Virus record (IMG/VR): IMGVR_UViG_3300048625_000299
Span: 1-64,000 of that record
Strand: one strand, 5' to 3'
Length of the DNA stretch: 64,000 nucleotides
In this document: in pieces, positions 9,453 to 20,977 of the stretch
How the letters are laid out: the number at the start of each line of letters is the position of its first letter
Numbering within the stretch: position 1 is the first letter of the stretch
Made by a program: the position numbers and the translations under genes
Notes under the pieces: generated by a model
Told to the model about the DNA's origin: nothing
Databases searched by the model: none
Seen by the model: the letters and a program-made list of their open reading frames with translations, nothing else

Positions 9453-10508
9453 ATGAAGATAGCCCTGCTAGGTGACACGCATATTGGTGCGCGTAACGAC
9501 AACCTGAATTTCCATGAGTTCTTCAAGAAGTTTTACGACGAAGTATTCTTTCCATACCTCCATGAACATAAGATCGACCATGTGATTCAGCTTGGCGATA
9601 TGTTCGATCGTCGAAAATATATCAACTTTCAATCGTTGAAACATGGTCGTGAGTATTTGTTGAATCCGTTAAATGATCTCAACGCTTGGGCCTTGGTCGG
9701 CAATCACGACACCTACTACAAGAATACGAACGACGTCAATTCGTTGGAGCTGTTGCTTGATGGGTACAAAAACATCAACGTAATCAACACACCTACAGAG
9801 ATCCACTTCGAAGACAAGTTGTTCCTGCTGATGCCATGGATATGTCCAGAGAATGAGCGAGAGTGTATCGACGCAATAACAAACACCAAAGCAGATGTTG
9901 TTATCGGACATTTTGAAATCACCGGATTTGAAATGTATAGAGGAACTGTGTGTGATGAGGGATTGGATGTTAGCATCTTCCGTCGACCACCAATGGTGTT
10001 GTCTGGACACTTTCACCACAGATCGCAGAATGGAAATATCCACTATCTCGGAACACCATATGAAATGACATGGTCCGATCATGGAGACATCAAGGGATTC
10101 CACATCTACGACACTGACACTGGCGAGCTCGAATTCATCCCCAACCCTCATGTCATGTTCCATAAGATCCTGTATGATGATCAGGAGAAGACGATGGAAG
10201 AAGTCACAAGCATCGATTATGAGAAGTATAGTGGAACCATTGTCAAGCTGATTGTCAGGACCAAGAATAACCCAGCATGGTTCGATCTTATGATCGATAA
10301 GCTAGAGAAGGCTGGTGTTAGTGATATCCAAGTCGTTGAGGATCATTTCCACCTAGATGTGGAAACGGATGATGAAATCATTAACGAAGCTGAAGATACG
10401 CTAACCATCTTGACGAAGTACATCGACGGGCTGCAGATACAAGGTGACAGACAACGTCTTGATTCGCTAATGCAGAACTTATATCACGAAGCATTGAGTA
10501 CAGAATAA
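9453..10508 (+). CDS. gp47: recombination endonuclease subunit (Mre11-like)
   Basis: GDTHIG, LGDMFD, GNHD, SGHFH. Confidence 0.95.
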   Translation: MKIALLGDTHIGARNDNLNFHEFFKKFYDEVFFPYLHEHKIDHVIQLGDMFDRRKYINFQSLKHGREYLLNPLNDLNAWALVGNHDTYYKNTNDVNSLELLLDGYKNINVINTPTEIHFEDKLFLLMPWICPENERECIDAITNTKADVVIGHFEITGFEMYRGTVCDEGLDVSIFRRPPMVLSGHFHHRSQNGNIHYLGTPYEMTWSDHGDIKGFHIYDTDTGELEFIPNPHVMFHKILYDDQEKTMEEVTSIDYEKYSGTIVKLIVRTKNNPAWFDLMIDKLEKAGVSDIQVVEDHFHLDVETDDEIINEAEDTLTILTKYIDGLQIQGDRQRLDSLMQNLYHEALSTE

Positions 10509-11227
10509 TGAGATTCTTGATCACAGGACATGAGGGGTTTATTGGCCGCCATGTATTCGAATACTACTCATCTAAGTATGATTGTGTAGGACTGGATATC
10601 AAATCCGGCAACGATATTACCGAGTGTGTGTTGCCAGAATGTGATGTCATCATCCACCTTGCTGGGTTGCCTGGTGTAAGGCGTAGCAAGGAGTTTCCAG
10701 AAGACTATTGGCACGCCAATGTGATTGGTAGTCAGAGGGTATTTGAACATGCTGAACGCATTGGAGCAAGGCTGTTGTATGCGTCTAGTTCGTCCGTAAA
10801 GGGGTGGTACAACAATCCATATGCCACGACCAAGAAGGTGGTGGAAATGATTGCTCCTCCACGTTCATTGGGAATGAGATTCCATACTGTATATGGCCGC
10901 GATTCTCGACCCGACATGATGTATGATATGTTGATCGGCCATCGTGCAAGGTACATTACCAACCACATGCGAGACTTTACACACGTTGATGATGTTGTAA
11001 CAGCTATAGACGTACTGTATAATAATGGGGTTTGTGGTATTGTTGACATAGGATCTAACAATCCAGTATCTGTAATTGAGCTATCGCAGGCAGCAGGCCA
11101 ATCACTACCAATAATGCAAGTGGGTGGAGAGGCCCACATTACGTGCGCCAATACCACATTATTAACTTCGCTTGGTTGGAAGCCAACGAAGCATGTATTA
11201 ACTGAAATGCGTAATGATATACTTTAA
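10508..11227 (+). CDS. NAD-dependent epimerase/dehydratase
   Basis: ITGHEGFIG Rossmann motif, YASSSS, YATTK, RDFTHV. Confidence 0.88.
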   Translation: MRFLITGHEGFIGRHVFEYYSSKYDCVGLDIKSGNDITECVLPECDVIIHLAGLPGVRRSKEFPEDYWHANVIGSQRVFEHAERIGARLLYASSSSVKGWYNNPYATTKKVVEMIAPPRSLGMRFHTVYGRDSRPDMMYDMLIGHRARYITNHMRDFTHVDDVVTAIDVLYNNGVCGIVDIGSNNPVSVIELSQAAGQSLPIMQVGGEAHITCANTTLLTSLGWKPTKHVLTEMRNDIL

Positions 11228-12929
11228 GACTATACGATGGAAGAACTTGCTCAGCACAGGCAATGTCTTTACGGAAATTCAATTCGACAAACATAAGACC
11301 ACATTGATTGTGGGTGAGAATGGTGCTGGTAAGTCGACGATGCTTGATGCGTTGTCATTTGCGATGTATGGCAAGCCGTTCCGCAATATCAAGAAGAACC
11401 AATTGATCAATACAGTCAATGGTAAGGGTGCTACAGTTGAGCTTGAATTCTCTATCGGCAAAAAAGAGTACAAGATTGTACGTGGAATTAAACCAAACGT
11501 GTTTGATATCTTCGTCGATGGCAATTTGATTGATCAGAATGCCGATGCAAAAGAGTATCAAGCGATGCTCGAGACTCAGATTCTGAAATTGAACCAGAAG
11601 TCGTTTGCTCAGATCGTCATCTTAGGCAGCGCATCATTCGTACCCTTCATGCAGTTGCAAACGGCTCACAGAAGAGAGATTATTGAAGATCTTTTGGACA
11701 TCGGCATCTTCTCGACGATGAATAGCCTGCTGAAGGATAAGGTCGCTCTGAATAAGATCAAGATGTCTGATGCTGATAATGCGATTCGTTCGAATGCTGA
11801 CAAGATCGAGATGTACAACAAGCACATCCAAATATTGAAACAGAATAACGATGAGCTGATTGAACAGAAGCGCCAACAATCGTCCAAGCTGTTGGACGAT
11901 ATCGATAATGCTAACAGCAGTATCACGAGGATCAATGGTGAGATTGAGACACTCAATGGAAGCATTACAGACCAAGACAAGGTACGGAAGAAGCTAGAGA
12001 CGATCCGAACAATGTCGGGGAAGGTGGATCATCGTCTTGAAAAGATCAAAAAGGATATTGAATTCTTTAATGCCCATGATGACTGTCCGACATGCCGACA
12101 AGGAATTGCACACGAACATAAGGCTGAGATTCTAGAAAAGAACAATGCCCAGGTTTCTGAAATCGAACAAGGTAAGAGCCAGATTACAGAAGAGCTTGAA
12201 AGTATCAACACTAGACTTACCGAGATCTCCAGCGTATCATCTTCAATCTCTACTAAAAACAGAGAAGTGTCAGACCTACTCGTTCAAGTCCGCACTTGGT
12301 CCAACTTCGTAAGAGGGATCGAGCAAGAGATTGAGAAGCTGAATAACAATACGAAGCAGATCGACACTAACGATCAAGAGATCAACACATATAAAGAAGC
12401 ATTGAAATTGGCCATTGCTTCCAAAGAAGAGTTGACGAAGGACAAGTCTACGTTCGATGTTGCAAGCATCTTGTTAAAGGATACTGGTATCAAGACGAAA
12501 ATCATCAAGCAGTATGTACCCGTGATCAATAAGCTGATTAACAAATACTTGGCAGCGATGGACTTCTTTGTTAATTTTGAATTAAATGAGAGTTTTGAAG
12601 AAACAATTAAGTCGAGGTTCCGCGATGAATTTACATACGACTCCTTCAGTGAGGGAGAAAAGAGCCGTATTGATTTGGCTTTGTTATTCGCTTGGCGCGC
12701 TGTGGCTAAGTTGCGCAATAGCGCAAGTACCAATTTGCTGATTATGGATGAGGTATTCGATAGCTCACTCGATGTGCAGGGCGGTGATGAATTGATTAAG
12801 ATTATCCAAAGCATTGTCGGCGATTCTAATGTATTCGTGATCAGCCACAAGACAGACCAACTGATGGATAAGTTTGAGCATGTAATCAAATTCCAGAAGG
12901 TAAAGAACTTCAGCCAAATAGCAACATAA
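11214..12929 (+). CDS. gp46: recombination ATPase (Rad50-like)
   Basis: GENGAGKS, CPTC hook, FSEGEK, MDEVFD. Confidence 0.96.
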   Translation: MIYFKTIRWKNLLSTGNVFTEIQFDKHKTTLIVGENGAGKSTMLDALSFAMYGKPFRNIKKNQLINTVNGKGATVELEFSIGKKEYKIVRGIKPNVFDIFVDGNLIDQNADAKEYQAMLETQILKLNQKSFAQIVILGSASFVPFMQLQTAHRREIIEDLLDIGIFSTMNSLLKDKVALNKIKMSDADNAIRSNADKIEMYNKHIQILKQNNDELIEQKRQQSSKLLDDIDNANSSITRINGEIETLNGSITDQDKVRKKLETIRTMSGKVDHRLEKIKKDIEFFNAHDDCPTCRQGIAHEHKAEILEKNNAQVSEIEQGKSQITEELESINTRLTEISSVSSSISTKNREVSDLLVQVRTWSNFVRGIEQEIEKLNNNTKQIDTNDQEINTYKEALKLAIASKEELTKDKSTFDVASILLKDTGIKTKIIKQYVPVINKLINKYLAAMDFFVNFELNESFEETIKSRFRDEFTYDSFSEGEKSRIDLALLFAWRAVAKLRNSASTNLLIMDEVFDSSLDVQGGDELIKIIQSIVGDSNVFVISHKTDQLMDKFEHVIKFQKVKNFSQIAT

Positions 12930-12937
12930 GGAAAAAT

Positions 12938-13534
12938 ATGATTTTAAATTTAGTAGACACAGGCAATCCGCTGCTGTATAAAGAATTGGAAGAGTTTGAT
13001 TTTGCAAACCCACCTTGCGACCCAGTCGAGTTAGCAAACAACCTAATCGAAACGATGGCTCATCATCGCGGTCTGGGGTTGTCATCCAACCAGTGTGGAT
13101 TGCCATATCGAGTGTTTGCGTTGTGGTCGGAGCAACCGCTTGTTGTATTTAATCCACGTATTATCGACCAGTCCTCAGAATTCGTCCAATTGGAAGAAGG
13201 CTGCTTGACTTTTCCAAATCTTTTTATTAAAATAAAGCGTCCGAAGATTATCAAGGTTCGTTTCCAAGATGTCACAGGTGCTACTCATACTGAAAAGTTT
13301 ATCGGCATGACTGCTCGTGGCTTCCTCCACGAGATGGATCATTTGGACGGCATCATTTATCAGAAGCGCGCTTCTGTACCGCAGTTGAACAAATCTGTGA
13401 ATCAGCGCAAGATGCTAGAGCGTAGGTTGAAGCGTGGTGAGGTGTATTATAAGCCAGCCGAAGTACCAGGTGTTGTATCCACAGACGGTACCATCACATT
13501 CAACACACGTACTGATACAATTACAAACGGTTAA
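12938..13534 (+). CDS. def: peptide deformylase
   Basis: GLGLSSNQ, EGCLT, HEMDH motifs. Confidence 0.93.
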   Translation: MILNLVDTGNPLLYKELEEFDFANPPCDPVELANNLIETMAHHRGLGLSSNQCGLPYRVFALWSEQPLVVFNPRIIDQSSEFVQLEEGCLTFPNLFIKIKRPKIIKVRFQDVTGATHTEKFIGMTARGFLHEMDHLDGIIYQKRASVPQLNKSVNQRKMLERRLKRGEVYYKPAEVPGVVSTDGTITFNTRTDTITNG

Positions 13535-13542
13535 GGAATTAC

Positions 13543-14376
13543 ATGGCAAAATTAAAAGTAGCAGAGTTATTTTACAGCGTCCAAGGTGAAGGACGTTACA
13601 TGGGCGTGCCGTCCGTGTTCCTCCGCATCTTCGGATGCAACTTCAAATGTGAAGGCTTCGGATTGCCTAAAGGAGAATTGAGTAATGAAAGAAACCTCGT
13701 CGATGCTGACTCAATCAAGAACTACAAAGACCTCCCACTCGTTAGCACCGGATGTGACTCTTATGCGTCTTGGGATCCTCGTTTTAAGCATCTTAGTCCT
13801 GTTCTTAGCACCGATAGCGTTGCCGATGCTATTATGGATATGCTTCCGTTTGGTGAGTGGAAAGAAGAGCACTTAGTTATTACAGGCGGCGAGCCGTTGC
13901 TCGGCTGGCAACGTGCATACCCAGACCTGCTTAAGCATCCTAAGATGTTGGCATTGAAGGAACTGACATTCGAGACGAATGGTACACAAGAGCTGACCAA
14001 AGAGTTTGCGGACTTCTTAAAGGAGTCATTTGAGTATGACCAGCTGACATTCTCTGTTAGTCCTAAGCTCAGCGTCAGTGGCGAGAAATGGGAAGAGGCG
14101 ATCTGCCCTCAAATCGTCGCTGAGTACAACAAGATCGGATACACATACTTGAAGTTCGTGGTCGCATCTGAGGAAGATGTCCAAGAAGCTGTTAAGGCTA
14201 CTGCAGAATATCGTGCAGCTGGTTTTGATGGGCCGGTGTATTTGATGCCGGTTGGTGGTGTAGAGAGCGTGTACACCATGAACGCTAAAAACGTAGCAAT
14301 CGCTGCTATGAATCTAGGTTACCGCTACAGCGATCGTTTGCAGGTACCTCTTTTTAAGAATGAGTGGGGCACATGA
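13543..14376 (+). CDS. queE: 7-carboxy-7-deazaguanine synthase (radical SAM)
   Basis: ELFYSVQGEG, GCNFKC...GCDS, ITGGEP, FETNG, SVSPK. Confidence 0.93.
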   Translation: MAKLKVAELFYSVQGEGRYMGVPSVFLRIFGCNFKCEGFGLPKGELSNERNLVDADSIKNYKDLPLVSTGCDSYASWDPRFKHLSPVLSTDSVADAIMDMLPFGEWKEEHLVITGGEPLLGWQRAYPDLLKHPKMLALKELTFETNGTQELTKEFADFLKESFEYDQLTFSVSPKLSVSGEKWEEAICPQIVAEYNKIGYTYLKFVVASEEDVQEAVKATAEYRAAGFDGPVYLMPVGGVESVYTMNAKNVAIAAMNLGYRYSDRLQVPLFKNEWGT

Positions 14377-14825
14377 TCAATTACTCTAATACAGAATTTG
14401 TAGATGACATCGACAAACTAACACACCAGATCATTGGGTCTGGTAAGCATTACGATTACATCGTTGGCGTGGTTCGTGGAGGAGCGATCCCAGCAGTATG
14501 CCTTTCGCATAGATTAGGTCTCCCGATGAAATGTGTGTCGTGGTCAACATTTCATGGAGATCAGATGCGAGAGTCTGCATGGGACATTGCAGAAGACATC
14601 CATGACGGCAAGAAGGTACTTTTAGTAGACGACATCCTCGACTCTGGACGAACGATCAAAGAATTGTTTGAAGATTGGGATGTGCAAAAGGAACAAGTTG
14701 ATGTTGCAGTGTTGATCTATAACACCGATCAGTCTATAGTACCAGAATACTATGGCAGAAAAGTAAACAAAGGTGTCGATCCGAGTTGGATCACCTTTTG
14801 GTGGGAAACAGAGGATGAGGAATAA
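14373..14825 (+). CDS. type I phosphoribosyltransferase
   Basis: RGG motif and PRPP loop VLLVDDILDSGRT. Confidence 0.88.
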   Translation: MINYSNTEFVDDIDKLTHQIIGSGKHYDYIVGVVRGGAIPAVCLSHRLGLPMKCVSWSTFHGDQMRESAWDIAEDIHDGKKVLLVDDILDSGRTIKELFEDWDVQKEQVDVAVLIYNTDQSIVPEYYGRKVNKGVDPSWITFWWETEDEE

Positions 14826-14827
14826 TA

Positions 14828-15331
14828 ATGAGTAAACCAGTCGTACAGTACAAATATACAAGTACTAAAGAGTATCATAATGCGTTTCCGGTTGCATACC
14901 GCCAATGGCGTGCCGATTCGCATTGCAACTTGATTCATGGCTATGCATTCAGCATGAAGTTCTATTTTGGGACAGATGACTTGGATGTTCGCAACTGGGC
15001 AGCAGACTATGGCGGTCTGAAGGAATTGAAAAACGTGCTCGAAAGTCAATTTGACCACACGCTCCTTGTAGCAGAAGATGATCCAGAGCTTGATTTCTAT
15101 AAAGAGATGGAAAAGCGTAAGTTGGCTAAACTTACCATCCTACCAAAGCTAGGGTGTGAAGGCCTTTCGGATCAATTATACAAGTACGTGAATGGTGTAT
15201 ACATTCCAGATATGTGGGGTCCTGCAGAAGCAGCTCGTCTGTGGTGTTACAGAGTTGAAGTACGTGAGACTCAAAGTAACATGGCCTTCCGTGAAGGACA
15301 TCGTGAATGGAATGAGGACTTGTTCGCATAA
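14828..15331 (+). CDS. queD: 6-carboxytetrahydropterin synthase
   Basis: HCNLIHGY, FDH, EVRET motifs. Confidence 0.88.
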   Translation: MSKPVVQYKYTSTKEYHNAFPVAYRQWRADSHCNLIHGYAFSMKFYFGTDDLDVRNWAADYGGLKELKNVLESQFDHTLLVAEDDPELDFYKEMEKRKLAKLTILPKLGCEGLSDQLYKYVNGVYIPDMWGPAEAARLWCYRVEVRETQSNMAFREGHREWNEDLFA

Positions 15332-15549
15332 TGGCATTCAAGCAATTTGCATGGGTCCCAGATGGGACTTATGATTATAGAGAATACCTAGTACGCTACG
15401 TTCTGAAGGACGGCAATGCTACTACAGTTCTTTCAAAGATGTGGGTTGACTCTGGCCCACCTGATGAACTATCATCAGAGTTAAAGCAACCATGGGGAGC
15501 GTTTCCAGACTTCCCTCCTAAACCACCAAAGAAAGTAGAACAGAAATGA
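15331..15549 (+). CDS. hypothetical protein
   Basis: ORF translationally coupled to neighbours. Confidence 0.6.
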   Translation: MAFKQFAWVPDGTYDYREYLVRYVLKDGNATTVLSKMWVDSGPPDELSSELKQPWGAFPDFPPKPPKKVEQK

Positions 15550-16295
15550 TCGCAGAAGGATTTGACGATAAAGGAAAAGCAGCTTCTAAGAAGAAAGCTG
15601 ATGTAGAGGGTACGTACTTGGTATCCGCCACAGTACGCAATCGACTGAAGCAAGCTAATAAGCGCTTCAATGCAAACGACAATATCTCTGAGTTCCTGAA
15701 AGAGGACGAAATTCCTAAGCTGGTTGACGAGGTCGCTGGGAAGTTCCAAGGCGTGTTGGAGAGCTTGGTTATTGACGTTGAAAACGACCCAAATTCCCAT
15801 GACACAGCTCGCCGCTTGGCGAAGATGTACGTGTATGAATTGATGGCTGGTCGCTATGAGAAGCCACCAAAAGTAACTGCGTTCCCCAACACAGGACCAG
15901 AACGATTCGAAGGCATGTTAGTTGTACGTGCTGAATTGATCTCTATGTGTTCGCACCACCACCAGCCAGTTAAGGGTACTGCTATTATTGGCATCATCCC
16001 TACAGGCGAAGTTATTGGGCTATCGAAGTATGCTCGTATTGCTCAGTGGTGTGCTCGTCGTGGTACGTTGCAAGAAGACCTCGCGAATCAAATCGCTAAG
16101 GAAATTATGAATGCAACAGACACAGAGAATTGCGCAGTGTATATCCAAGCAACTCATGGTTGTATGGAAAACCGAGGTGTGATGGCTCACTCGAGCTTGA
16201 CACAGACAAGCGTGGTCCATGGCTTATTCCACAACGATTCAGTTAAGGCTGAGTTCATGTCGAATGTGAAGTTGCAATTCGCAACAGCACGCTAA
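15546..16295 (+). CDS. folE: GTP cyclohydrolase I
   Basis: SMCSHHHQP, GLSKYAR, LQE, HGCMENRG. Confidence 0.95.
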   Translation: MIAEGFDDKGKAASKKKADVEGTYLVSATVRNRLKQANKRFNANDNISEFLKEDEIPKLVDEVAGKFQGVLESLVIDVENDPNSHDTARRLAKMYVYELMAGRYEKPPKVTAFPNTGPERFEGMLVVRAELISMCSHHHQPVKGTAIIGIIPTGEVIGLSKYARIAQWCARRGTLQEDLANQIAKEIMNATDTENCAVYIQATHGCMENRGVMAHSSLTQTSVVHGLFHNDSVKAEFMSNVKLQFATAR

Positions 16296-16322
16296 TTATT
16301 TTATTATAGGAGTGATTATATT

Positions 16323-16547
16323 ATGACACAAAAAAAGCGTATCCTTACATCATTATCATCTGGCAAAGAGTTGTCTGCAAAACAACTGACATCTTTGTAT
16401 AAGATCGCATCCCCAACAAAGGTGATCTCTACCCTCCGTGCAGAGGGTCATAAGATCCAATTGAAGAAGCACACCGACCGTTCTGGTCGCACTACATCCA
16501 AATATCATTTGGTATCTAAGTCAACTCGCAAAACAGCTACAGCTTAA
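16323..16547 (+). CDS. small winged-helix DNA-binding protein
   Basis: Basic 74 aa, ISTLRAEGHKI, AGGAG RBS. Confidence 0.65.
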   Translation: MTQKKRILTSLSSGKELSAKQLTSLYKIASPTKVISTLRAEGHKIQLKKHTDRSGRTTSKYHLVSKSTRKTATA

Positions 16548-16590
16548 TGCAATACCCGCCTAGTGCGGGTTTCACATTGAAAGGTGTAGC

Positions 16591-17121
16591 ATGATTGTTA
16601 CCACATATGAGTTGGGCGATCTTGCTAATGGTGGATTTAAAAAGTCGAAGCTGGCTGAGGAAGCATTACTTAAATTAGTTGCCAGTAAGAAGAGATTGTC
16701 GTATAGTGTAGACTTGACTGAGGGAAAGAATACAGATTGGGATGGTATGTTAGGTACTGACCCAATCGAAATTAAGTTCTCAGCCAAGATGTTTACTGGC
16801 GAAAACCGATTCGGCAATTTCTTCGAGACGCATTATAAGAGCGGAAAACCATCTGCTCTTCTATTAACAAAAGCCACGAAATATATTACAGTAAGCCCTG
16901 GTTGGTCAAATAAGTACGCATCCGTTACAGGCAAAGTGCGTATGTGGAATGTAAATGAGCTATTGAATGTAATGGATAATCCATACCCTGTAGTCGAGTT
17001 TGATTATGGTGAAAAAGGATTCTTTGTACCAAACAAGTCTTCCCTAGTTAATCACGAATGGGTTGGCGACGTTTCGTTCGATCAAGAAAAGCGTAGTTAC
17101 AATATTTCAAATTGGATATAA
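16591..17121 (+). CDS. hypothetical protein, possible PD-(D/E)XK nuclease
   Basis: WDG...IEIK spacing. Confidence 0.45.
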   Translation: MIVTTYELGDLANGGFKKSKLAEEALLKLVASKKRLSYSVDLTEGKNTDWDGMLGTDPIEIKFSAKMFTGENRFGNFFETHYKSGKPSALLLTKATKYITVSPGWSNKYASVTGKVRMWNVNELLNVMDNPYPVVEFDYGEKGFFVPNKSSLVNHEWVGDVSFDQEKRSYNISNWI

Positions 17122-17125
17122 GATA

Positions 17126-17566
17126 ATGAATACTATTAATGTGACGGGGGATTCGGTAGTGACTATCAACACCCCACCTAAGTCATACATCTGGGTTACC
17201 TTCCAGAAAGAAGGAATCCACAAATACCCAGCAGCAGCGACTGATCCCAAACTGGCAACAGGCGATTGGCTTGATGTTAGCTTCCTAGGTGTACCGCATC
17301 GCCATATTTTCCACTTCCGTGTGGAGATGGAAGTGTTCCACGATGACCGTGATGTTGAATTTATCCAAGCAAAGCGCTGGATGGAGAGCTGGTATCAGGA
17401 CGGAACATTGGCACTCGACTTCAAGTCTTGCGAGATGATGGCTAAAGAATTGTATGCGAAATGCATCAAGCAATGGCCAGATCGTGATTATGTAGTCCAA
17501 GTATCGGAGGACGGCGAAAACGGCTGCCGCATTGTGTTCGATAAACCGAAGGTGTATGGTCAATGA
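17126..17566 (+). CDS. second QueD-like T-fold protein (DpdL-like candidate)
   Basis: EGIH, HRHIFHF, SCEMMA, VSEDGENG; inside the que cluster. Confidence 0.65.
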   Translation: MNTINVTGDSVVTINTPPKSYIWVTFQKEGIHKYPAAATDPKLATGDWLDVSFLGVPHRHIFHFRVEMEVFHDDRDVEFIQAKRWMESWYQDGTLALDFKSCEMMAKELYAKCIKQWPDRDYVVQVSEDGENGCRIVFDKPKVYGQ

Positions 17567-18408
17567 TTAACTTCTGCCACATTTCCCCAACCAAGTACCT
17601 AGAGCAGTTCACAGAGCAGAATGGCGCTCATTTGATTCTGGCTCACCTAGTCGAGACTGATCCTGACTACTGCGAATTCTATGCAAACCTAGAAGATGGC
17701 AAGTATAAGATCATGGACAACTCTGCATTCGAGATGTTCAAGCTTGGCCGTCCGATGTATGACTCTGATAAGCTGATCGAAATGGCAAAGGCATGTAAAG
17801 CTGATTGCGTCGTGATGTCTGATTATCCTAAGATGCATTCATCACATACAGTTAACGCTGCTGTCAAGATGATTCCTGAATTGAAGGGTGCAGGATTCGA
17901 TACATTCTTCTGCCCACAAAGTGAACTCGGCGACATTGAAGATCTGATGTCTACGATGGCATGGGCACTGAACAATCCAAACATCGATTTGATTGGTATG
18001 TCCATCCTAGCATGTCCTATTGCAATGGGCGTGAATGAAAGCACGTTCAATGATGGCAAGCGTTCTGATTCTTATAAGATGCAACGATTCACATCGCGCT
18101 TTGCTGTATTTGATGAAATGCAACGTCGTGGCCTATTGAACGACTTGGCAATGAAGCGTTTCCATTGTTTGGGGATGGTTGATGGCCCTAAAGAGATTCG
18201 CTTGCTTAAGCAATTCGAACAATACATCTTCTCATGGGATTCAAGTGCTGCTGTATGGGCTGGCATTCACGGTCTCCAGTTCGACGGATCTCCTACTGGT
18301 CTGACGAACGGTAAGTTTGAGAAGGAAGTGGAATTTGACTACGTCGGCGAAGTGAATACACAATCAGTACAATACAATATCAATTATATCAGCGGACTTC
18401 TTAAATGA
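17563..18408 (+). CDS. DpdA/TGT-like deazaguanine transglycosylase family protein
   Basis: IMDNSAFE, FHCLG, SWDSS motifs of TGT-like barrels; context. Confidence 0.6.
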   Translation: MINFCHISPTKYLEQFTEQNGAHLILAHLVETDPDYCEFYANLEDGKYKIMDNSAFEMFKLGRPMYDSDKLIEMAKACKADCVVMSDYPKMHSSHTVNAAVKMIPELKGAGFDTFFCPQSELGDIEDLMSTMAWALNNPNIDLIGMSILACPIAMGVNESTFNDGKRSDSYKMQRFTSRFAVFDEMQRRGLLNDLAMKRFHCLGMVDGPKEIRLLKQFEQYIFSWDSSAAVWAGIHGLQFDGSPTGLTNGKFEKEVEFDYVGEVNTQSVQYNINYISGLLK

Positions 18409-18962
18409 GTTTCAAGATAATCGCCCTGACAGGGCCGAAGGGCAGCGGGAAGGATACAGTTGGTCAGTTGATCTCTGATGCGATTCCTAATGCCCAGACG
18501 ATCGCTTTTGCTGACCCCATCAAGCAAGTGATCGTCGACATATTCAAGCTGGATGGTATTAGTGATTATGATTTGTTTAAGCGTACAGTCGTTGACTACA
18601 AACTCGACTATGTGCCAAAGCATCTTGCTGGCAGACACGTAGTTCGTGAAATTGGTATGTTGATGCGCAACTATGACGATAAACAATTCAACAACTATAT
18701 CCGCACACGTGTGGAGTCTGATCCCCACAAGGTATGGATTGTTACTGATCTAAGATTTGATAATGAGTACACGTTCCTGAGGTCGCTGGGTGCTAAAATT
18801 GTTAAAATTACACGCCCGTCATATACATATGATGGCCATATTACTGAACGTGAATTCAACGACTCGCTTGTAGACCATACCATTATGAATGATGGGTCGT
18901 TAGAATACTTGAAGATTAGAACTGAAATTGTTATGAAGAATATTATACAGGAGTGGGCATGA
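18405..18962 (+). CDS. deoxynucleoside monophosphate kinase (T4 gp1-like)
   Basis: GPKGSGKDT, FADPIK, DLRFDNE. Confidence 0.88.
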   Translation: MSFKIIALTGPKGSGKDTVGQLISDAIPNAQTIAFADPIKQVIVDIFKLDGISDYDLFKRTVVDYKLDYVPKHLAGRHVVREIGMLMRNYDDKQFNNYIRTRVESDPHKVWIVTDLRFDNEYTFLRSLGAKIVKITRPSYTYDGHITEREFNDSLVDHTIMNDGSLEYLKIRTEIVMKNIIQEWA

Positions 18963-19459
18963 AGCACATTATGAGCACACATTCGAAGTCTACACTTTCG
19001 AATGTATTGAATGAAGACGTTCAGCCGAACGCAGTAGATCTTAGACTGGGTCAAGTCTTTAAGATCAAGGAAGATCTGTTTGAGATCTCTAATGAACACA
19101 AGAAGCATCGCGGCACCGACTATGAACTCAAGGTGGACCCAGAAGGATACTTCAACCTTGAGCCAGGTCATTATGAGGTGGTGATGGAAAATATTATCCG
19201 TGTGGGTGAAGGTGAAGCAGGCTGGGTGATTACCCGTTCGACACTAAACCGCAATGGTCTGTTCCTTACATCTGGATTATATGATAGCGGATATCATGGA
19301 GTGATGGCTGGTGTATTGCATGTTACTATCGGTAACGCAAGAATCAAAAAGGGCACACGCGTTGGACAATATCTCAGTTTTGAAGCTGAGGCATTGAGCA
19401 GCTACGACGGTGACTATGGATTGGGTAAAGAGCATGACAATAAATATGGAGTTAAATAA
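18959..19459 (+). CDS. trimeric dUTPase/dCTP deaminase family
   Basis: QPNAVDLRL, RSTLNRNG, YDSGYHG. Confidence 0.85.
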   Translation: MKHIMSTHSKSTLSNVLNEDVQPNAVDLRLGQVFKIKEDLFEISNEHKKHRGTDYELKVDPEGYFNLEPGHYEVVMENIIRVGEGEAGWVITRSTLNRNGLFLTSGLYDSGYHGVMAGVLHVTIGNARIKKGTRVGQYLSFEAEALSSYDGDYGLGKEHDNKYGVK

Positions 19460-20313
19460 TGGAAATCAAAGCTGAAATTGCAGACTTGCAAAAAAAGAAA
19501 CTGTTCGTAGCGACGCCGATGTACGGTGGTGCTTGTGCAGGCATGTATACAAGATCTATCGCAGACTTGTCTGCTATCTGCGCAAAATACCAAATTCCGT
19601 TGCAATTGTACTTCTTGTTCAATGAGTCATTGATCACCCGTGCTCGTAACTATTGCGTTGATGAATTCCTGCGCAGTGGTGCAACTCATTTGATGTTCAT
19701 CGACTCTGACATTGGCTTTAATCCAAATGATGTCTTGGCGCTGCTGGCATTGATGTCTGATGATAGTCCTTATGACGTCATGGGCGGTCCATACCCTAAG
19801 AAGTGCATCTCTTGGGAAAAGATCAAGATGGCTGTCGATAAAGGAGTTGCGGACGAAGATCCAAACGTACTCGAGAAGTTCGTTGGCGACTATGTGTTCA
19901 ACCCTAAAGGCAATCAACGTGAGATTCCATTGGGCGCTCCAGTTGAAGTTATGGAGATCGGCACTGGGTTTATGATGGTACGTCGTAAGACGTTCGAGGA
20001 TTACGCAAAAGCATATCCACACCAGTCTTACAAGCCAGATCATGTCCGTACCGAGCACTTCGATGGAACACGTGAAATCATCGCTTATTTCGATTGTATC
20101 ATCGACCCACAAAGCAAGCGCTACTTGTCAGAAGACTACATGTTCTGTTACAACGTAGAGAAGATGGGTGGTCGTGTGTGGTTCTGTCCATGGATGCAAC
20201 TACAACACGTTGGTAGTTATGTGTTTGGCGGAAGCTTAGCTGATTTGGCATCGATCGGTGCATCAGCAACAGCGGATGTTAATAAACTTGGCGGCAAGCC
20301 AAAAGCTAAGTGA
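19459..20313 (+). CDS. GT-A fold glycosyltransferase-like protein
   Basis: ATPMYGG, ESLITRARN, FIDSD (DxD), GTGFM, SEDY. Confidence 0.7.
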   Translation: MEIKAEIADLQKKKLFVATPMYGGACAGMYTRSIADLSAICAKYQIPLQLYFLFNESLITRARNYCVDEFLRSGATHLMFIDSDIGFNPNDVLALLALMSDDSPYDVMGGPYPKKCISWEKIKMAVDKGVADEDPNVLEKFVGDYVFNPKGNQREIPLGAPVEVMEIGTGFMMVRRKTFEDYAKAYPHQSYKPDHVRTEHFDGTREIIAYFDCIIDPQSKRYLSEDYMFCYNVEKMGGRVWFCPWMQLQHVGSYVFGGSLADLASIGASATADVNKLGGKPKAK

Positions 20314-20320
20314 GGACTGA

Positions 20321-20977
20321 ATGAAACTTGAAGGACGCACAATTTCGATATTGAAAAACTTTGCGAGCATTAATCCTTCCATCATGTTTAAGCCAGGTCA
20401 GACTTTGAGGACGATGAGTCCTCAGAAGACGATCTTGGCTCAAGCAGTGATTAAAGAAGAGATGCCGAGTGAGTTTGCGATTTATGACCTAAGTCGTTTC
20501 CTGAGTGTGATGAGCTTGTTCCAACAACCATCACTTACGTGCCACGACAAGTATGCAGTAATTAGCGATGGGTCTCAGAAGGTGAACTATACGTTCGCCG
20601 ACCCAACAATGATCGTACTGCCTTCTGATAAGACGCCGAAGTTTGAGGCTGATGTCAGCTTTCAGCTATCGGCAGATGTGCTGAATAAGGTTCAGAAAGC
20701 TATGGGCGTATTGAATATGCCAGAACTTGCGGTTGTTGGTGACGGCAACAGTATCATGGTTCAAGCAATCGACTCAAAGAATCCATCCGGCGATAGCTTT
20801 GCTATTGAAGTTGGTGAAACAGAACACACATTCAGAATGATTTTTAGAGCCGAGAATATGAAGATTATTCAGGCTGATTATGATGTCGCCATCTCTTTTA
20901 AAGGCATCTCGCATTTCAAATGTGAAGATGTTGAATACTGGATCGCGACTGAATCTTACTCTACCCAAGGAAAATAA
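20321..20977 (+). CDS. gp45: sliding clamp
   Basis: LKNFASINPS, FAIYDL, YWIATE. Confidence 0.95.
   Translation: MKLEGRTISILKNFASINPSIMFKPGQTLRTMSPQKTILAQAVIKEEMPSEFAIYDLSRFLSVMSLFQQPSLTCHDKYAVISDGSQKVNYTFADPTMIVLPSDKTPKFEADVSFQLSADVLNKVQKAMGVLNMPELAVVGDGNSIMVQAIDSKNPSGDSFAIEVGETEHTFRMIFRAENMKIIQADYDVAISFKGISHFKCEDVEYWIATESYSTQGK

What the first reader, a model, noticed from the sequence alone, without database searches (positions are those of the whole stretch)
13543..20313. 7-deazaguanine cluster without queC, with a second T-fold enzyme, PRTase and kinase
Seen: queE, PRTase, queD, folE, a QueD-like paralogue, a TGT/DpdA-like gene, dNMP kinase, a dUTPase-like gene and a GT-A protein are contiguous, with no queC or queF in the window. 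Known: FolE, QueD and QueE make CDG; QueC is needed for preQ0; some phages carry CDG or decarboxylated 7-deazaguanine in DNA, with a QueD-like paralogue proposed as decarboxylase. Inference: the DNA carries 7-deazaguanine or CDG, possibly via a nucleotide-level route (PRTase plus kinase) allowing extensive G replacement.
Basis: partly seen in the sequence, partly recalled or inferred. Interest (0 to 1): 0.66.

Follow-up and report, generated by a model that had tools for sequence, protein, structure and literature searches.

The report
Phage 7-deazaguanine DNA cassette (DpdA3/DpdL)
A T4-like environmental phage carries the gene set that in a cultured phage replaces every guanine in the DNA by 7-deazaguanine; the kind was described in 2023, but the genes beside its 'transglycosylase' (a dNTP pyrophosphatase and a nucleotide kinase) suggest the swap may be made on free nucleotides, not on finished DNA.

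Summary
Window 13543-20313 (+ strand) encodes QueE, a purine-type PRTase, QueD, FolE, a QueD paralogue, a TGT-fold protein, a dNMP kinase, a dUTPase/DCD-fold protein and a GT-A-fold protein.

- **Paralogue and TGT-fold protein:** the paralogue (17126-17566) carries the published DpdL signature LxxxHRHxF. The 281-aa protein is a DpdA3-family member by fold and profile.
- **What it is:** the phiST-type route to 2'-deoxy-7-deazaguanine DNA, so a new member of a known kind. It is widespread: 418 IMG/VR contigs, inserted between PDF and gp45 of T4-like phages.
- **Corrections:** the GT-A gene belongs to the phage backbone, not the cassette. The PRTase is accessory (13 of 42 loci). A very divergent QueC-like gene lies 118 kb beyond the window's end, in an unrelated module.
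- **New point:** DpdA3 is flanked by a nucleotide phosphohydrolase and a P-loop or DUF3310 kinase in four independent lineages, using non-homologous enzymes. It is fused to DUF3310 in one phage.
- **Further support:** the window's DpdA3-like protein lacks the dsDNA-binding insertion of bacterial DpdA.
- **Consequence:** this reopens a pre-replicative, T4-like (gp56/gp42/gp1) route for complete G replacement. It is untested.

The parts
13543..14376 (+). QueE-like radical SAM enzyme (CDG synthase)
   Evidence: phrog_2076 E 9e-53. It matches five NCBIfam QueE models, all below cut-off. Pfam Radical_SAM is 25 bits, below cut-off. Present in 42 related loci.
14364..14825 (+). Small purine-type phosphoribosyltransferase (accessory)
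   Evidence: Pfam Pribosyltran 69.8 bits. The nearest solved structure is P. horikoshii purine PRTase 1vdm, E 1e-14. The DDILDSG PRPP loop and the C-terminal W..F.WE motif are conserved. Phage homologues sit beside 7-deazaguanine synthesis genes (FolE/QueE/QueD) in immuto, BUCT-ZZ01 and StAshley, and in phiST beside a kinase and RNR about 20 genes from its cluster. Found in 13 of 42 related loci.
14828..15331 (+). QueD (CPH4 synthase)
   Evidence: Pfam PTPS 47.7 bits and phrog_2389 E 5e-34. The motif is HCNLIHGY, that is CxxxHGY, as in all related phage QueD. It is the only Pfam PTPS match in the genome.
15331..15549 (+). Conserved 72-aa protein of unknown function
   Evidence: No family match. 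Present between QueD and FolE in 37 related loci.
15546..16295 (+). FolE (GTP cyclohydrolase I)
   Evidence: Pfam GTP_cyclohydroI 138 bits and NCBIfam FolE E 9e-42.
16323..16547 (+). Winged-helix protein (HTH_39), accessory
   Evidence: Pfam HTH_39 36.8 bits. Found in only 13 of 80 related loci.
16591..17121 (+). 176-aa protein of unknown function, accessory
   Evidence: No family match. Found in only 8 of 80 loci. The Atlas gives only a weak lead to PD-(D/E)XK-like clusters.
17126..17566 (+). DpdL (QueD paralogue, proposed CDG decarboxylase)
   Evidence: 35% identical, E 3e-17, to phiST DpdL CGPG_00067. The signature LxxxHRHxF is present as LGVPHRHIF and recurs across the related loci with minor variation. 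Present in 78 of 80 loci. No Pfam PTPS hit.
17563..18408 (+). DpdA3-family TGT-fold base-exchange enzyme
   Evidence: AF2 pLDDT 90.5. Z 16.5-17.4 to ArcTGT, TGT and DpdA. hhalign probability is 98.3% to immuto DpdA3 and 96% to phiST DpdA3, and the profile finds CP220 CPT_0056. D52, D87 and D226 are invariant. There is no Pfam TGT hit.
18405..18962 (+). T4 gp1-type dNMP kinase
   Evidence: Pfam DNMK 74.5 bits and phrog_139 E 2e-39. It is the only copy in the genome. In related loci this slot holds either this kinase (48 loci) or a DUF3310 ORF (31 loci), never both.
18953..19459 (+). dUTPase/DCD-fold dNTP pyrophosphatase
   Evidence: Pfam DCD 54.7 bits; the NCBIfam archaeal-type dUTPase model scores 85.8 bits against a cut-off of 130. 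It is the only copy in the genome. Present in 78 of 80 loci, at a fixed offset just downstream of the DpdA3-like gene. Among 50,697 phage records, homologues occur only in the four phages that carry this DpdA3-like subfamily.
19459..20313 (+). GT-A-fold protein; phage backbone gene, not part of the cassette
   Evidence: The AF2 model (pLDDT 72.8) has only GT-A enzymes among its top Foldseek hits, and DSD is invariant. It is also present, upstream of gp45, in DLP_6 and Cr30, which lack the cassette.

Best explanation
**Layer 1 (confidence about 0.8): what the cassette does.**
- It is inserted between the peptide deformylase gene and the GT-A/gp45 genes of a T4-like phage.
- It makes the free base 7-deazaguanine from GTP. 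FolE gives H2NTP, QueD gives CPH4, QueE gives 7-carboxy-7-deazaguanine (CDG), and DpdL removes the carboxyl group.
- A DpdA3-family TGT-fold enzyme then exchanges this base for guanine on a deoxyribose.
- The virion DNA therefore carries 2'-deoxy-7-deazaguanosine (dDG). Replacement is probably complete or nearly so, as measured in Cellulophaga phage phiST.
- Enzyme identities are shown by homology and fold. The chemistry is inferred from the published families.

**Layer 2 (my commitment on the exchange step): about 0.45 for nucleotide level, 0.40 for DNA level.** The exchange is made before replication, in the logic of T4 gp56/gp42/gp1:
1. The DCD-fold enzyme turns dGTP into dGMP.
2. DpdA3 swaps guanine for 7-deazaguanine on dGMP.
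3. The adjacent dNMP kinase (in sister phages a DUF3310 protein) re-phosphorylates the product.
4. Cellular NDK and the phage polymerase finish the job.
5. The optional PRTase recycles the released guanine to GMP, then GTP, the substrate of FolE.

All of layer 2 is inference from gene neighbourhoods, a gene fusion and the absence of a structural element.
For: **Layer 1**
- Family and fold assignments.
- DpdL signature and 35% identity to phiST DpdL.
- Full-length profile match to the DpdA3 of phiST, immuto and CP220.
- No canonical QueC, no QueF and no other TGT in the complete genome.
- The same gene order in 80 related viral loci, out of 418 found.
- phiST DNA contains 302,000 dDG per 10^6 nucleotides and its dG peak is gone; DpdA3 phages are completely modified (PMC10516641).

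**Layer 2**
- (i) The DCD-fold protein lies at a fixed offset just downstream of DpdA3 in 78 of 80 loci. Among 50,697 phage genomes it has homologues only in the four that carry this DpdA3 subfamily.
- (ii) The slot between the two holds a DNMK kinase in 48 loci and a DUF3310 ORF in 31, never both. In Rhizobium phage RHph_I1_18 the DUF3310 domain is fused to the DpdA3-like protein. That domain matches PHROG 'nucleotide kinase' families.
- (iii) Three other DpdA3 lineages place non-homologous analogues beside DpdA3:
  - phiST: MazG + AAA_18 kinase.
  - immuto: PRA-PH/MazG-like hydrolase + AAA_28 kinase.
  - CP220: HD hydrolase fused to AAA_33, plus an AAA_28 kinase.
- (iv) Three non-DpdA3 clusters have no annotated pyrophosphatase beside DpdA, and only one has a kinase.
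- (v) The protein has only 55 residues after the putative nucleophile D226. In bacterial DpdA the 128-residue Ins8 there forms the dsDNA-binding surface (PMC10164549). The family is acidic, pI about 5.
- (vi) Literature:
  - The ADG nucleoside was seen in CP220-infected cells.
  - DpdA3 plus DpdL gave no dDG in E. coli.
  - A modified dGTP was earlier proposed for Campylobacter phages.
- (vii) That polymerases accept 7-deaza-dGTP well is established knowledge.
Against: **Layer 1**
- No chemical data exist for this phage or its close relatives.
- DpdL activity has never been shown in vitro (PMC10516641).
- A divergent QueC-like gene exists elsewhere in the genome and could in principle divert CDG.

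**Layer 2**
- Every characterised TGT/DpdA enzyme acts on a polynucleotide.
- The kinase and the DCD-fold gene are each the only copy in this genome. They may simply be the phage's general gp1-type and dUTPase functions that travel with the cassette.
- The 80 loci come from one phage clade, so their synteny may reflect descent rather than selection.
- The DCD-fold protein most resembles dUTPases, and no purine-specific member of that fold is known to me.
- One DpdA2 cluster also carries an adenylate-kinase-like gene.
- The field's stated view is post-replicative insertion (PMC10516641; PMC12783734).
Confidence: 0.75

Rival explanations
1. Post-replicative insertion, the published model. The base 7-deazaguanine is made as above, and DpdA3 exchanges it for guanine directly in double-stranded phage DNA. 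The dNMP kinase and the DCD-fold enzyme are the phage's ordinary gp1-type kinase and dUTPase. The PRTase salvages the excised guanine.
For: - DpdA3 is homologous to TGT and DpdA, which act on tRNA and DNA (PMC10164549).
- The kinase and the DCD-fold gene are each single-copy in the genome, so the phage needs them anyway.
- The dNMP kinase family is generic, with 244 phage records.
- The authors' own assignment (PMC10516641).
Against: - It does not explain the recurrent phosphohydrolase + kinase pair beside DpdA3 in four lineages built from non-homologous enzymes.
- It does not explain the DpdA3::DUF3310 fusion.
- It does not explain why the DCD-fold subfamily has exactly the distribution of this DpdA3 subfamily.
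- The dsDNA-binding insertion Ins8 of bacterial DpdA is absent.
- Heterologous DpdA3 + DpdL gave no dDG.
Confidence: 0.4
2. PRTase-entry ribonucleotide route. The PRTase joins 7-deazaguanine (or CDG) to PRPP. The ribonucleotide is phosphorylated, reduced by the phage ribonucleotide reductase, and incorporated by the polymerase. This follows the way the tubercidin and toyocamycin pathways build deazapurine nucleotides (recalled from memory; not tested here).
For: - The PRTase lies between queE and queD.
- Its phage homologues lie beside FolE/QueE/QueD in immuto, BUCT-ZZ01 and StAshley; in phiST the homologue sits next to a kinase and RNR, about 20 genes from the 7-deazaguanine cluster.
- PA5oct has a further PRTase between DpdL and QueE.
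Against: - The PRTase is present in only 13 of 42 related loci that cover that region.
- tblastn finds no homologue in Ahp1, D479, RHph_I1_18 or Bakedbeans, which keep DpdL and DpdA3.
- All homologues keep the third Asp of the DDxxD(S/T)G loop. In 6-oxopurine PRTases that residue acts on N7, the atom missing in 7-deazaguanine (the residue's role is from established knowledge of HGPRT/XGPRT).
- This route leaves DpdA3 without a role.
Confidence: 0.1
3. The distant QueC-like protein completes the preQ0 or ADG branch, so the DNA carries dPreQ0 or dADG rather than dDG.
For: - A 208-aa PP-loop protein at genome 181687-182313 matches Pfam QueC at 41.5 bits over its C-terminal half.
- It keeps the C-terminal Cys cluster.
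Against: - It scores 34.6 bits against a cut-off of 150 on the QueC equivalog model.
- Its match to B. subtilis QueC is E 0.0095 only.
- Its PP-loop reads SSGLES.
- It has only three relatives near 50% identity among 5.8 billion proteins.
- It always lies in a module with a DUF4815 giant protein, radical SAM, fatty-acid desaturase, ketoacyl synthase and methyl- or sulfotransferase genes.
- It is absent from all 80 cassette loci, while DpdL is present in 78.
Confidence: 0.05

Closest known systems
Cellulophaga phage phiST dDG system (FolE, QueD, QueE, DpdL, DpdA3; Cui, Hutinet et al., NAR 2023, PMC10516641)
   Same: - The same five core functions, and no canonical QueC.
- DpdL signature LxxxHRHxF, with 35% identity.
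- A DpdA3 of about 260-280 aa without a Zn subdomain.
- A homologous PRTase (32% identity).
- A dNTP pyrophosphatase and a P-loop kinase inside the cluster.
   Different: - The host phage is a 235-kb T4-like myovirus, not a 79-kb siphovirus.
- The DpdA3 shares only about 26% identity with phiST's in the profile alignment.
- The pyrophosphatase is DCD/dUTPase-fold rather than MazG.
- The kinase is DNMK rather than AAA_18.
- The PRTase lies inside the cluster instead of near RNR.
[quoted passage not shown]
   Same: - A DpdA3-family enzyme (hhalign 98.3% to immuto; the profile finds CP220 CPT_0056).
- Flanking nucleotide phosphohydrolase and kinase genes.
- immuto also has the PRTase.
   Different: Those phages carry QueC/QueF/DpdN (immuto) or, per the paper, a QueC-type ADG route (CP220). 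They lack DpdL, so the end product differs.
Bacterial DpdA (PDB 7ui4) and tRNA-guanine transglycosylases
   Same: - The same TIM-barrel fold: Z 16.5-17.4, rmsd about 3.2 A over about 235 residues.
- Three conserved Asp in comparable motifs (PMC10164549).
   Different: - No Pfam TGT match and no sequence hit to any PDB chain.
- About 100-130 residues shorter, lacking the Ins8/Zn region that binds DNA or tRNA.
- No DpdB partner was recognised among the neighbouring genes; the genome was not searched for one.
T4 hydroxymethylcytosine pathway (gp56 dCTPase, gp42 dCMP hydroxymethylase, gp1 dNMP kinase)
   Same: It works alike if layer 2 is right: a dUTPase-superfamily pyrophosphatase, an enzyme that alters the dNMP base, and a gp1-type kinase, encoded side by side in a T4-like genome, giving complete base replacement. 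The T4 pathway is established knowledge.
   Different: The base-altering enzyme would be a TGT-fold transglycosylase, not a thymidylate-synthase homologue. The DCD-fold protein gave no tblastn match below E 1e-5 to any phage record outside the four DpdA3-like carriers. There is no experimental support yet.

Membership tests
DpdA3 (phage 7-deazaguanine transglycosylase subfamily) | TGT-type TIM-barrel fold | tested here: met
   AF2 pLDDT 90.5. All top-50 Foldseek hits are TGT or DpdA. VIA-align Z 17.4 (1iq8), 16.7 (TGT), 16.5 (7ui4).
DpdA3 (phage 7-deazaguanine transglycosylase subfamily) | Full-length homology to the named DpdA3 proteins (phiST CGPG_00065, immuto gp206, Campylobacter phage homologue) | tested here: met
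   hhalign 96% (E 3.7e-9) to phiST and 98.3% (E 2.3e-14) to immuto. The profile finds CP220 CPT_0056 at E 6.8e-6.
DpdA3 (phage 7-deazaguanine transglycosylase subfamily) | The three catalytic or base-binding Asp of TGT/DpdA | tested here: inconclusive
   D52 (DNS), D87 and D226 (WDSS) are invariant in 30 homologues. In the hhalign alignments D52 (DNS/DNG) and D226 (DSS/DSC/DTS) align with Asp in phiST and immuto DpdA3; D87 aligns with an Asp too. Residue-by-residue superposition on Asp95/130/256 of DpdA was not available.
DpdA3 (phage 7-deazaguanine transglycosylase subfamily) | Guanine/7-deazaguanine exchange activity, and its substrate (DNA or nucleotide) | not testable with these tools
   Needs an enzyme assay. 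The authors could not show DpdA3 activity in E. coli (PMC10516641).
DpdL (proposed CDG decarboxylase) | Signature LxxxHRHxF in place of QueD's CxxxHGH | tested here: met
   LGVPHRHIF in the window. FLxxPHRHxFHF is the prevailing form across the related loci, with minor variants.
DpdL (proposed CDG decarboxylase) | Homology to phiST CGPG_00067 | tested here: met
   BLASTP 35% identity over 121 columns, E 3e-17.
DpdL (proposed CDG decarboxylase) | Co-occurs with FolE, QueD, QueE and DpdA but not QueC | tested here: met
   Caveat: there is a divergent QueC-like gene in an unrelated module.
QueC (7-cyano-7-deazaguanine synthase), for the ORF at genome 181687-182313 | Reaches the equivalog model cut-off | tested here: not met
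   TIGR00364 34.6 bits against 150.3; PRK11106 18.3 against 378. Pfam QueC 41.5 bits, over the C-terminal half only.
QueC (7-cyano-7-deazaguanine synthase), for the ORF at genome 181687-182313 | PP-loop SGGxDS and a C-terminal Zn Cys cluster | tested here: inconclusive
   The PP-loop reads SSGLES. The Cys cluster C-x8-CGRCSNC is present. The motif definitions are from general knowledge of QueC.
QueD (CPH4 synthase) | PTPS fold family and CxxxHGH motif | tested here: inconclusive
   Pfam PTPS 47.7 bits, above cut-off. The motif is HCNLIHGY (CxxxHGY), as in all related phage QueD including the phiST and immuto types.
6-oxopurine phosphoribosyltransferase (XGPRT/HGPRT type) | PRPP loop with three acidic residues, DDxxD(S/T)G, and a C-terminal aromatic platform | tested here: met
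   VDDILDSGRT and W..F.WE are conserved in 17 phage homologues. The best PDB matches are archaeal purine PRTases and XGPRT. All NCBIfam equivalog models score below cut-off. Substrate is not testable here.
dUTPase / dCTP deaminase superfamily | Family HMM over cut-off, and the Arg-Ser and GxxDxGY motifs | tested here: met
   Pfam DCD 54.7 bits against a cut-off of 27. RSTLNRNG and GLYDSGYHG are present. The archaeal dUTPase equivalog scores 85.8 against 130, so it is not an equivalog. Base specificity is not testable here.
GT-A glycosyltransferase (19459-20313) | GT-A fold with a DxD motif | tested here: met
   Foldseek top hits are STIV A197, ppGalNAc-T, Mnn9 and ColGalT1 (E 3e-7 to 1e-4), from a model of pLDDT 72.8. 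D82-S-D84 is invariant.

The most novel reading that the evidence does not exclude
DpdA3 enzymes are not DNA transglycosylases. They are nucleotide-level (dGMP) guanine/7-deazaguanine exchangers that work between a dGTP-directed phosphohydrolase and a nucleotide kinase. On this reading, the complete replacement of G in DpdA3 phages (dDG, dADG, fdPreQ1) is pre-replicative, like T4 hydroxymethylcytosine or the Z-genome. [quoted passage not shown]
Probability: 0.4. Interest if true: 0.85.

Novelty: new member of a known kind. Interest (0 to 1): 0.58.

Why it matters
- **Abundance.** The DpdA3/DpdL route to 7-deazaguanine DNA is common in uncultured T4-like phages. There are 418 IMG/VR contigs and about 1,550 proteins at E below 0.001 in the word-search database. 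It is not a curiosity of a few marine siphoviruses.
- **Practical consequence.** Such DNA should resist many guanine-dependent restriction enzymes. The behaviour of 7-deazaguanine DNA in cloning and nanopore work was not examined here.
- **Open question made testable.** Is complete G replacement made on DNA or on nucleotides? Four phage lineages have recruited a pyrophosphatase, a DpdA3 and a kinase from different protein families, and one phage fuses two of them. That defines a three-enzyme in vitro experiment that can settle it. It may also explain why DpdA3 has failed in heterologous tests.

Tried and rejected
- **No DNA relatives among phage records.** Megablast of the region against 50,697 phage records found no match.
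- **TGT-like gene invisible to sequence models.** Pfam, NCBIfam and a PDB profile search gave nothing for it. Only fold and profile-profile comparison placed it.
- **QueC-like gene in IMG/VR.** The search for related loci found nothing. Its relatives came from the word search and contig look-ups.
- **Kinase and dUTPase-like gene as extra copies.** I considered this and rejected it: each is the only copy in the genome.
- **GT-A gene as part of the system.** Rejected, because cassette-less T4-like phages have it too.
- **PRTase as obligatory entry enzyme.** Rejected on its patchy distribution.
- **Net charge of DpdA3** (pI about 5). This is only weak evidence and is not relied on.
- **Rfam scan of 10-24 kb.** No RNA family and no riboswitch.
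- **Literature.** Searches for a PRTase, a kinase or a nucleotide-level route in 7-deazaguanine phages found no paper addressing them. A search for data on Aeromonas phage Ahp1_CNU-2021 found only an unrelated podophage of the same name.
- **TGT-like gene in PA5oct, ACP17, BUCT-ZZ01 and StAshley.** Neither Pfam TGT nor my DpdA3 profile detected one. This is a limit of sensitivity, not proof of absence.

Full report
**Setting.** The window is the first 64 kb of a complete, terminally redundant viral record of 234,864 bp. The finding lies in the replication module of a T4-like phage. Upstream are a Rad50-like gp46 (11214-12929) and a peptide deformylase (12938-13534). Downstream are the gp45 clamp (20321-20977), DsbA, gp44 and gp62. 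GC content is an even 42-48%. Megablast found no close DNA relative among 50,697 phage records.

**Checking the observation.** Twelve + strand ORFs with abutting or overlapping ends fill 13543-20313.
- **Family scans** confirm these:
  - QueE: phrog_2076, E 9e-53.
  - A phosphoribosyltransferase: Pfam 69.8 bits.
  - QueD: PTPS 47.7 bits.
  - FolE: 138 bits.
  - A T4 gp1-type dNMP kinase: DNMK 74.5 bits.
  - A DCD/dUTPase-fold protein: 54.7 bits.
- **The 'QueD-like paralogue'** is the ORF whose ATG lies at 17126. It gives no Pfam hit. It is 35% identical (E 3e-17) to CGPG_00067 of Cellulophaga phage phiST, the founding DpdL. It carries LGVPHRHIF, the published DpdL signature LxxxHRHxF.
- **The 'TGT/DpdA-like gene'** (17563-18408) matches no Pfam, NCBIfam or PDB sequence model.
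  - An AlphaFold2 model built on 30 homologues (pLDDT 90.5) aligns with archaeosine TGT, bacterial TGT and the DNA preQ0 insertase DpdA. Z is 16.5-17.4, with rmsd about 3.2 A over about 235 residues.
  - Its profile matches the DpdA3 proteins of immuto (98.3%) and phiST (96%) over the full length. It also finds the DpdA3 of Campylobacter phage CP220.
- **The last ORF** (19459-20313) has no Pfam hit, but it folds as a GT-A enzyme with an invariant DSD motif.
- **queC and queF.** Neither occurs in the window, and QueF occurs nowhere in the genome.

**The QueC question.** One 208-aa PP-loop ORF at 181687-182313 matches the C-terminal half of Pfam QueC (41.5 bits). It scores 34.6 bits against the 150-bit cut-off of the QueC equivalog model, and E 0.0095 against B. 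subtilis QueC. Only three relatives near 50% identity exist among 5.8 billion proteins.
- Like the window phage's copy, those relatives lie in a conserved module. The module holds a 2,186-aa DUF4815 protein, a radical SAM enzyme, a fatty-acid desaturase, a ketoacyl synthase and a methyl- or sulfotransferase.
- The gene never lies near the cassette in 80 related loci.
- I conclude that it is not the pathway's QueC, though an action on CDG cannot be excluded.

**What the cassette is.** The DpdA3-like protein has about 1,550 relatives (E below 0.001) in the word-search database, and 418 IMG/VR contigs encode one. In the 80 best loci the order is gp46, PDF, QueE, (PRTase), QueD, a 72-aa ORF, FolE, (wHTH, 176-aa ORF), DpdL, DpdA3-like, kinase, DCD-fold, GT-A, gp45.
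- T4-like phages DLP_6 and Cr30 have gp46, PDF, GT-A and gp45 with none of the genes in between.
- The cassette therefore runs from QueE to the DCD-fold gene, and the GT-A gene belongs to the backbone.
- FolE, QueD, QueE, DpdL and DpdA3 without QueC is the gene set of phiST. Its DNA contains 302,000 dDG per 10^6 nucleotides and its dG peak is gone (PMC10516641).
- The window phage is therefore predicted to carry dDG. This is a new member of a kind described in 2023.

**The PRTase.**
- *Fold and motifs.* It resembles small archaeal purine PRTases and XGPRT. It keeps the DDxxD(S/T)G loop, whose third Asp acts on N7 in 6-oxopurine PRTases, and a C-terminal aromatic motif.
- *Distribution.* Its phage homologues lie beside FolE, QueE or QueD in immuto, Synechococcus phage BUCT-ZZ01 and Brevundimonas phage StAshley. 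In phiST the homologue lies next to a kinase and RNR, about 20 genes from the 7-deazaguanine cluster. A more distant PRTase lies between DpdL and QueE in PA5oct.
- *It is optional here.* It occurs in 13 of 42 loci that cover the QueE region, and tblastn finds no homologue in Ahp1, D479, RHph_I1_18 or Bakedbeans.
- *Most economical reading.* It salvages the guanine that every exchange releases: G to GMP to GTP, the substrate of FolE. Making a deaza-ribonucleotide is the less likely reading. Neither is tested.

**Where the exchange happens.**
- *Within this clade.*
  - The DCD-fold gene follows DpdA3 in 78 of 80 loci.
  - At E below 1e-5 it has homologues in only four of 50,697 phage genomes. 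These are exactly the four that hold this DpdA3 subfamily.
  - The slot between them holds the DNMK kinase in 48 loci and a DUF3310 ORF of about 90 aa in 31, never both.
  - In RHph_I1_18 that DUF3310 domain is fused to the C-terminus of the DpdA3-like protein. It matches PHROG families annotated 'nucleotide kinase'.
- *Across lineages.* Three other DpdA3 lineages repeat the pattern with unrelated proteins:
  - phiST: MazG, DpdL, an AAA_18 kinase, DpdA3.
  - immuto: a PRA-PH/MazG-like hydrolase, DpdA3, DpdN, an AAA_28 kinase.
  - CP220: an HD hydrolase fused to an AAA_33 kinase, DpdA3, an AAA_28 kinase.
- *Controls.* Three clusters with other DpdA types showed no annotated pyrophosphatase, and one showed a kinase. 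This is a small sample read from annotation.
- *Structure.* Bacterial DpdA binds dsDNA through Ins1 and the 128-residue Ins8 that follows the nucleophile Asp256 (PMC10164549). The window protein has only 55 residues after the corresponding D226 and no Cys cluster.
- *Literature.*
  - The ADG nucleoside was found in CP220-infected cells.
  - DpdA3 plus DpdL gave no dDG in E. coli.
  - A modified dGTP had been proposed for Campylobacter phages before DpdA3 was recognised.
- *My reading.* These points fit a T4-style pre-replicative scheme: dGTP to dGMP, base exchange on dGMP, re-phosphorylation, polymerisation.
- *Against it.*
  - No TGT-fold enzyme is known to use a mononucleotide.
  - The kinase and the DCD-fold gene are each the only copy in this genome, so they could be general functions.
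  - The 80 loci belong to one clade.
  - The DCD-fold protein most resembles dUTPases.
- *Estimate.* About 0.45 for nucleotide level against 0.40 for DNA level.

**Novelty and verdict.** The gene inventory is confirmed, and dDG DNA is well supported by homology. The system is a known kind, so it is not a new class. The added value is threefold. The cassette is abundant in T4-like phages. And a comparative pattern makes the pre- versus post-replicative question directly testable.

**Limits.**
- No chemistry was available, and no residue-level superposition.
- The neighbour controls are few.

Noticed in passing
genome G000:C1:170000-189999 (L096), outside the window: A conserved module lies next to a 2,186-aa DUF4815 protein. 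It holds a divergent QueC-like PP-loop protein, a Methyltransf_24 protein (a sulfotransferase plus an APS-kinase-like gene in relatives), a radical SAM enzyme, a fatty-acid desaturase/hydroxylase and a ketoacyl synthase. QueC-like enzymes (Cap9, QatC) gave weak matches. A phage that makes CDG and also has a QueC-like ligase near a giant structural protein might be worth a look.
   Followed up: partly
L006, L007, L097, L098, L108 (phage records) and window 14364-14825: A family of small purine-type PRTases recurs in phages that carry 7-deazaguanine synthesis genes: this clade, phiST, immuto, BUCT-ZZ01, StAshley and, more distantly, PA5oct. It sits beside FolE/QueE/QueD in all but phiST, where it is near RNR. 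The papers I could search do not discuss it.
   Followed up: partly
L042-L091 (31 loci) and L004:8001-9269: A DUF3310 ORF of about 90 aa replaces the DNMK kinase in the same slot. In Rhizobium phage RHph_I1_18 it is fused to the DpdA3-like protein. This suggests that DUF3310 proteins here act as, or with, a nucleotide kinase.
   Followed up: yes
L107 (ACP17), L108 (PA5oct), L097 (BUCT-ZZ01): In these phages DpdL sits beside GT-B (GT1/GT4)-like proteins and large proteins without a family match. PA5oct adds an epimerase-like gene and a PRTase. Neither Pfam TGT nor my DpdA3 profile finds a transglycosylase in these genomes, so how they insert 7-deazaguanine was not resolved here.
   Followed up: partly
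window 10508-11227: An NAD-dependent epimerase/dehydratase gene (Pfam 81 bits) lies just upstream of gp46. Its function here is unknown. PA5oct has an epimerase-like gene inside its DpdL cluster.
   Followed up: no
window 14828-15331 and related loci: Phage QueD proteins of this and other 7-deazaguanine clusters read HCxxxHGY, not the textbook CxxxHGH. The Tyr was present in every homologue recovered.
   Followed up: partly
window 16323-17121: The winged-helix gene (13 of 80 related loci) and the 176-aa ORF (8 of 80 loci) between FolE and DpdL occur only in a minority of related loci. They look like a later insertion. The Atlas gives only a weak lead to PD-(D/E)XK nucleases.
   Followed up: partly
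window 12938-13534: A peptide deformylase gene is part of the conserved backbone of this T4-like group. It is also present in DLP_6, Cr30 and RHph_I1_18.
   Followed up: no
L012 (IMGVR_UViG_3300041986_000038): A separate 26-kb IMG/VR contig encodes this cluster's proteins at 100% amino-acid identity, in the same order.
   Followed up: no
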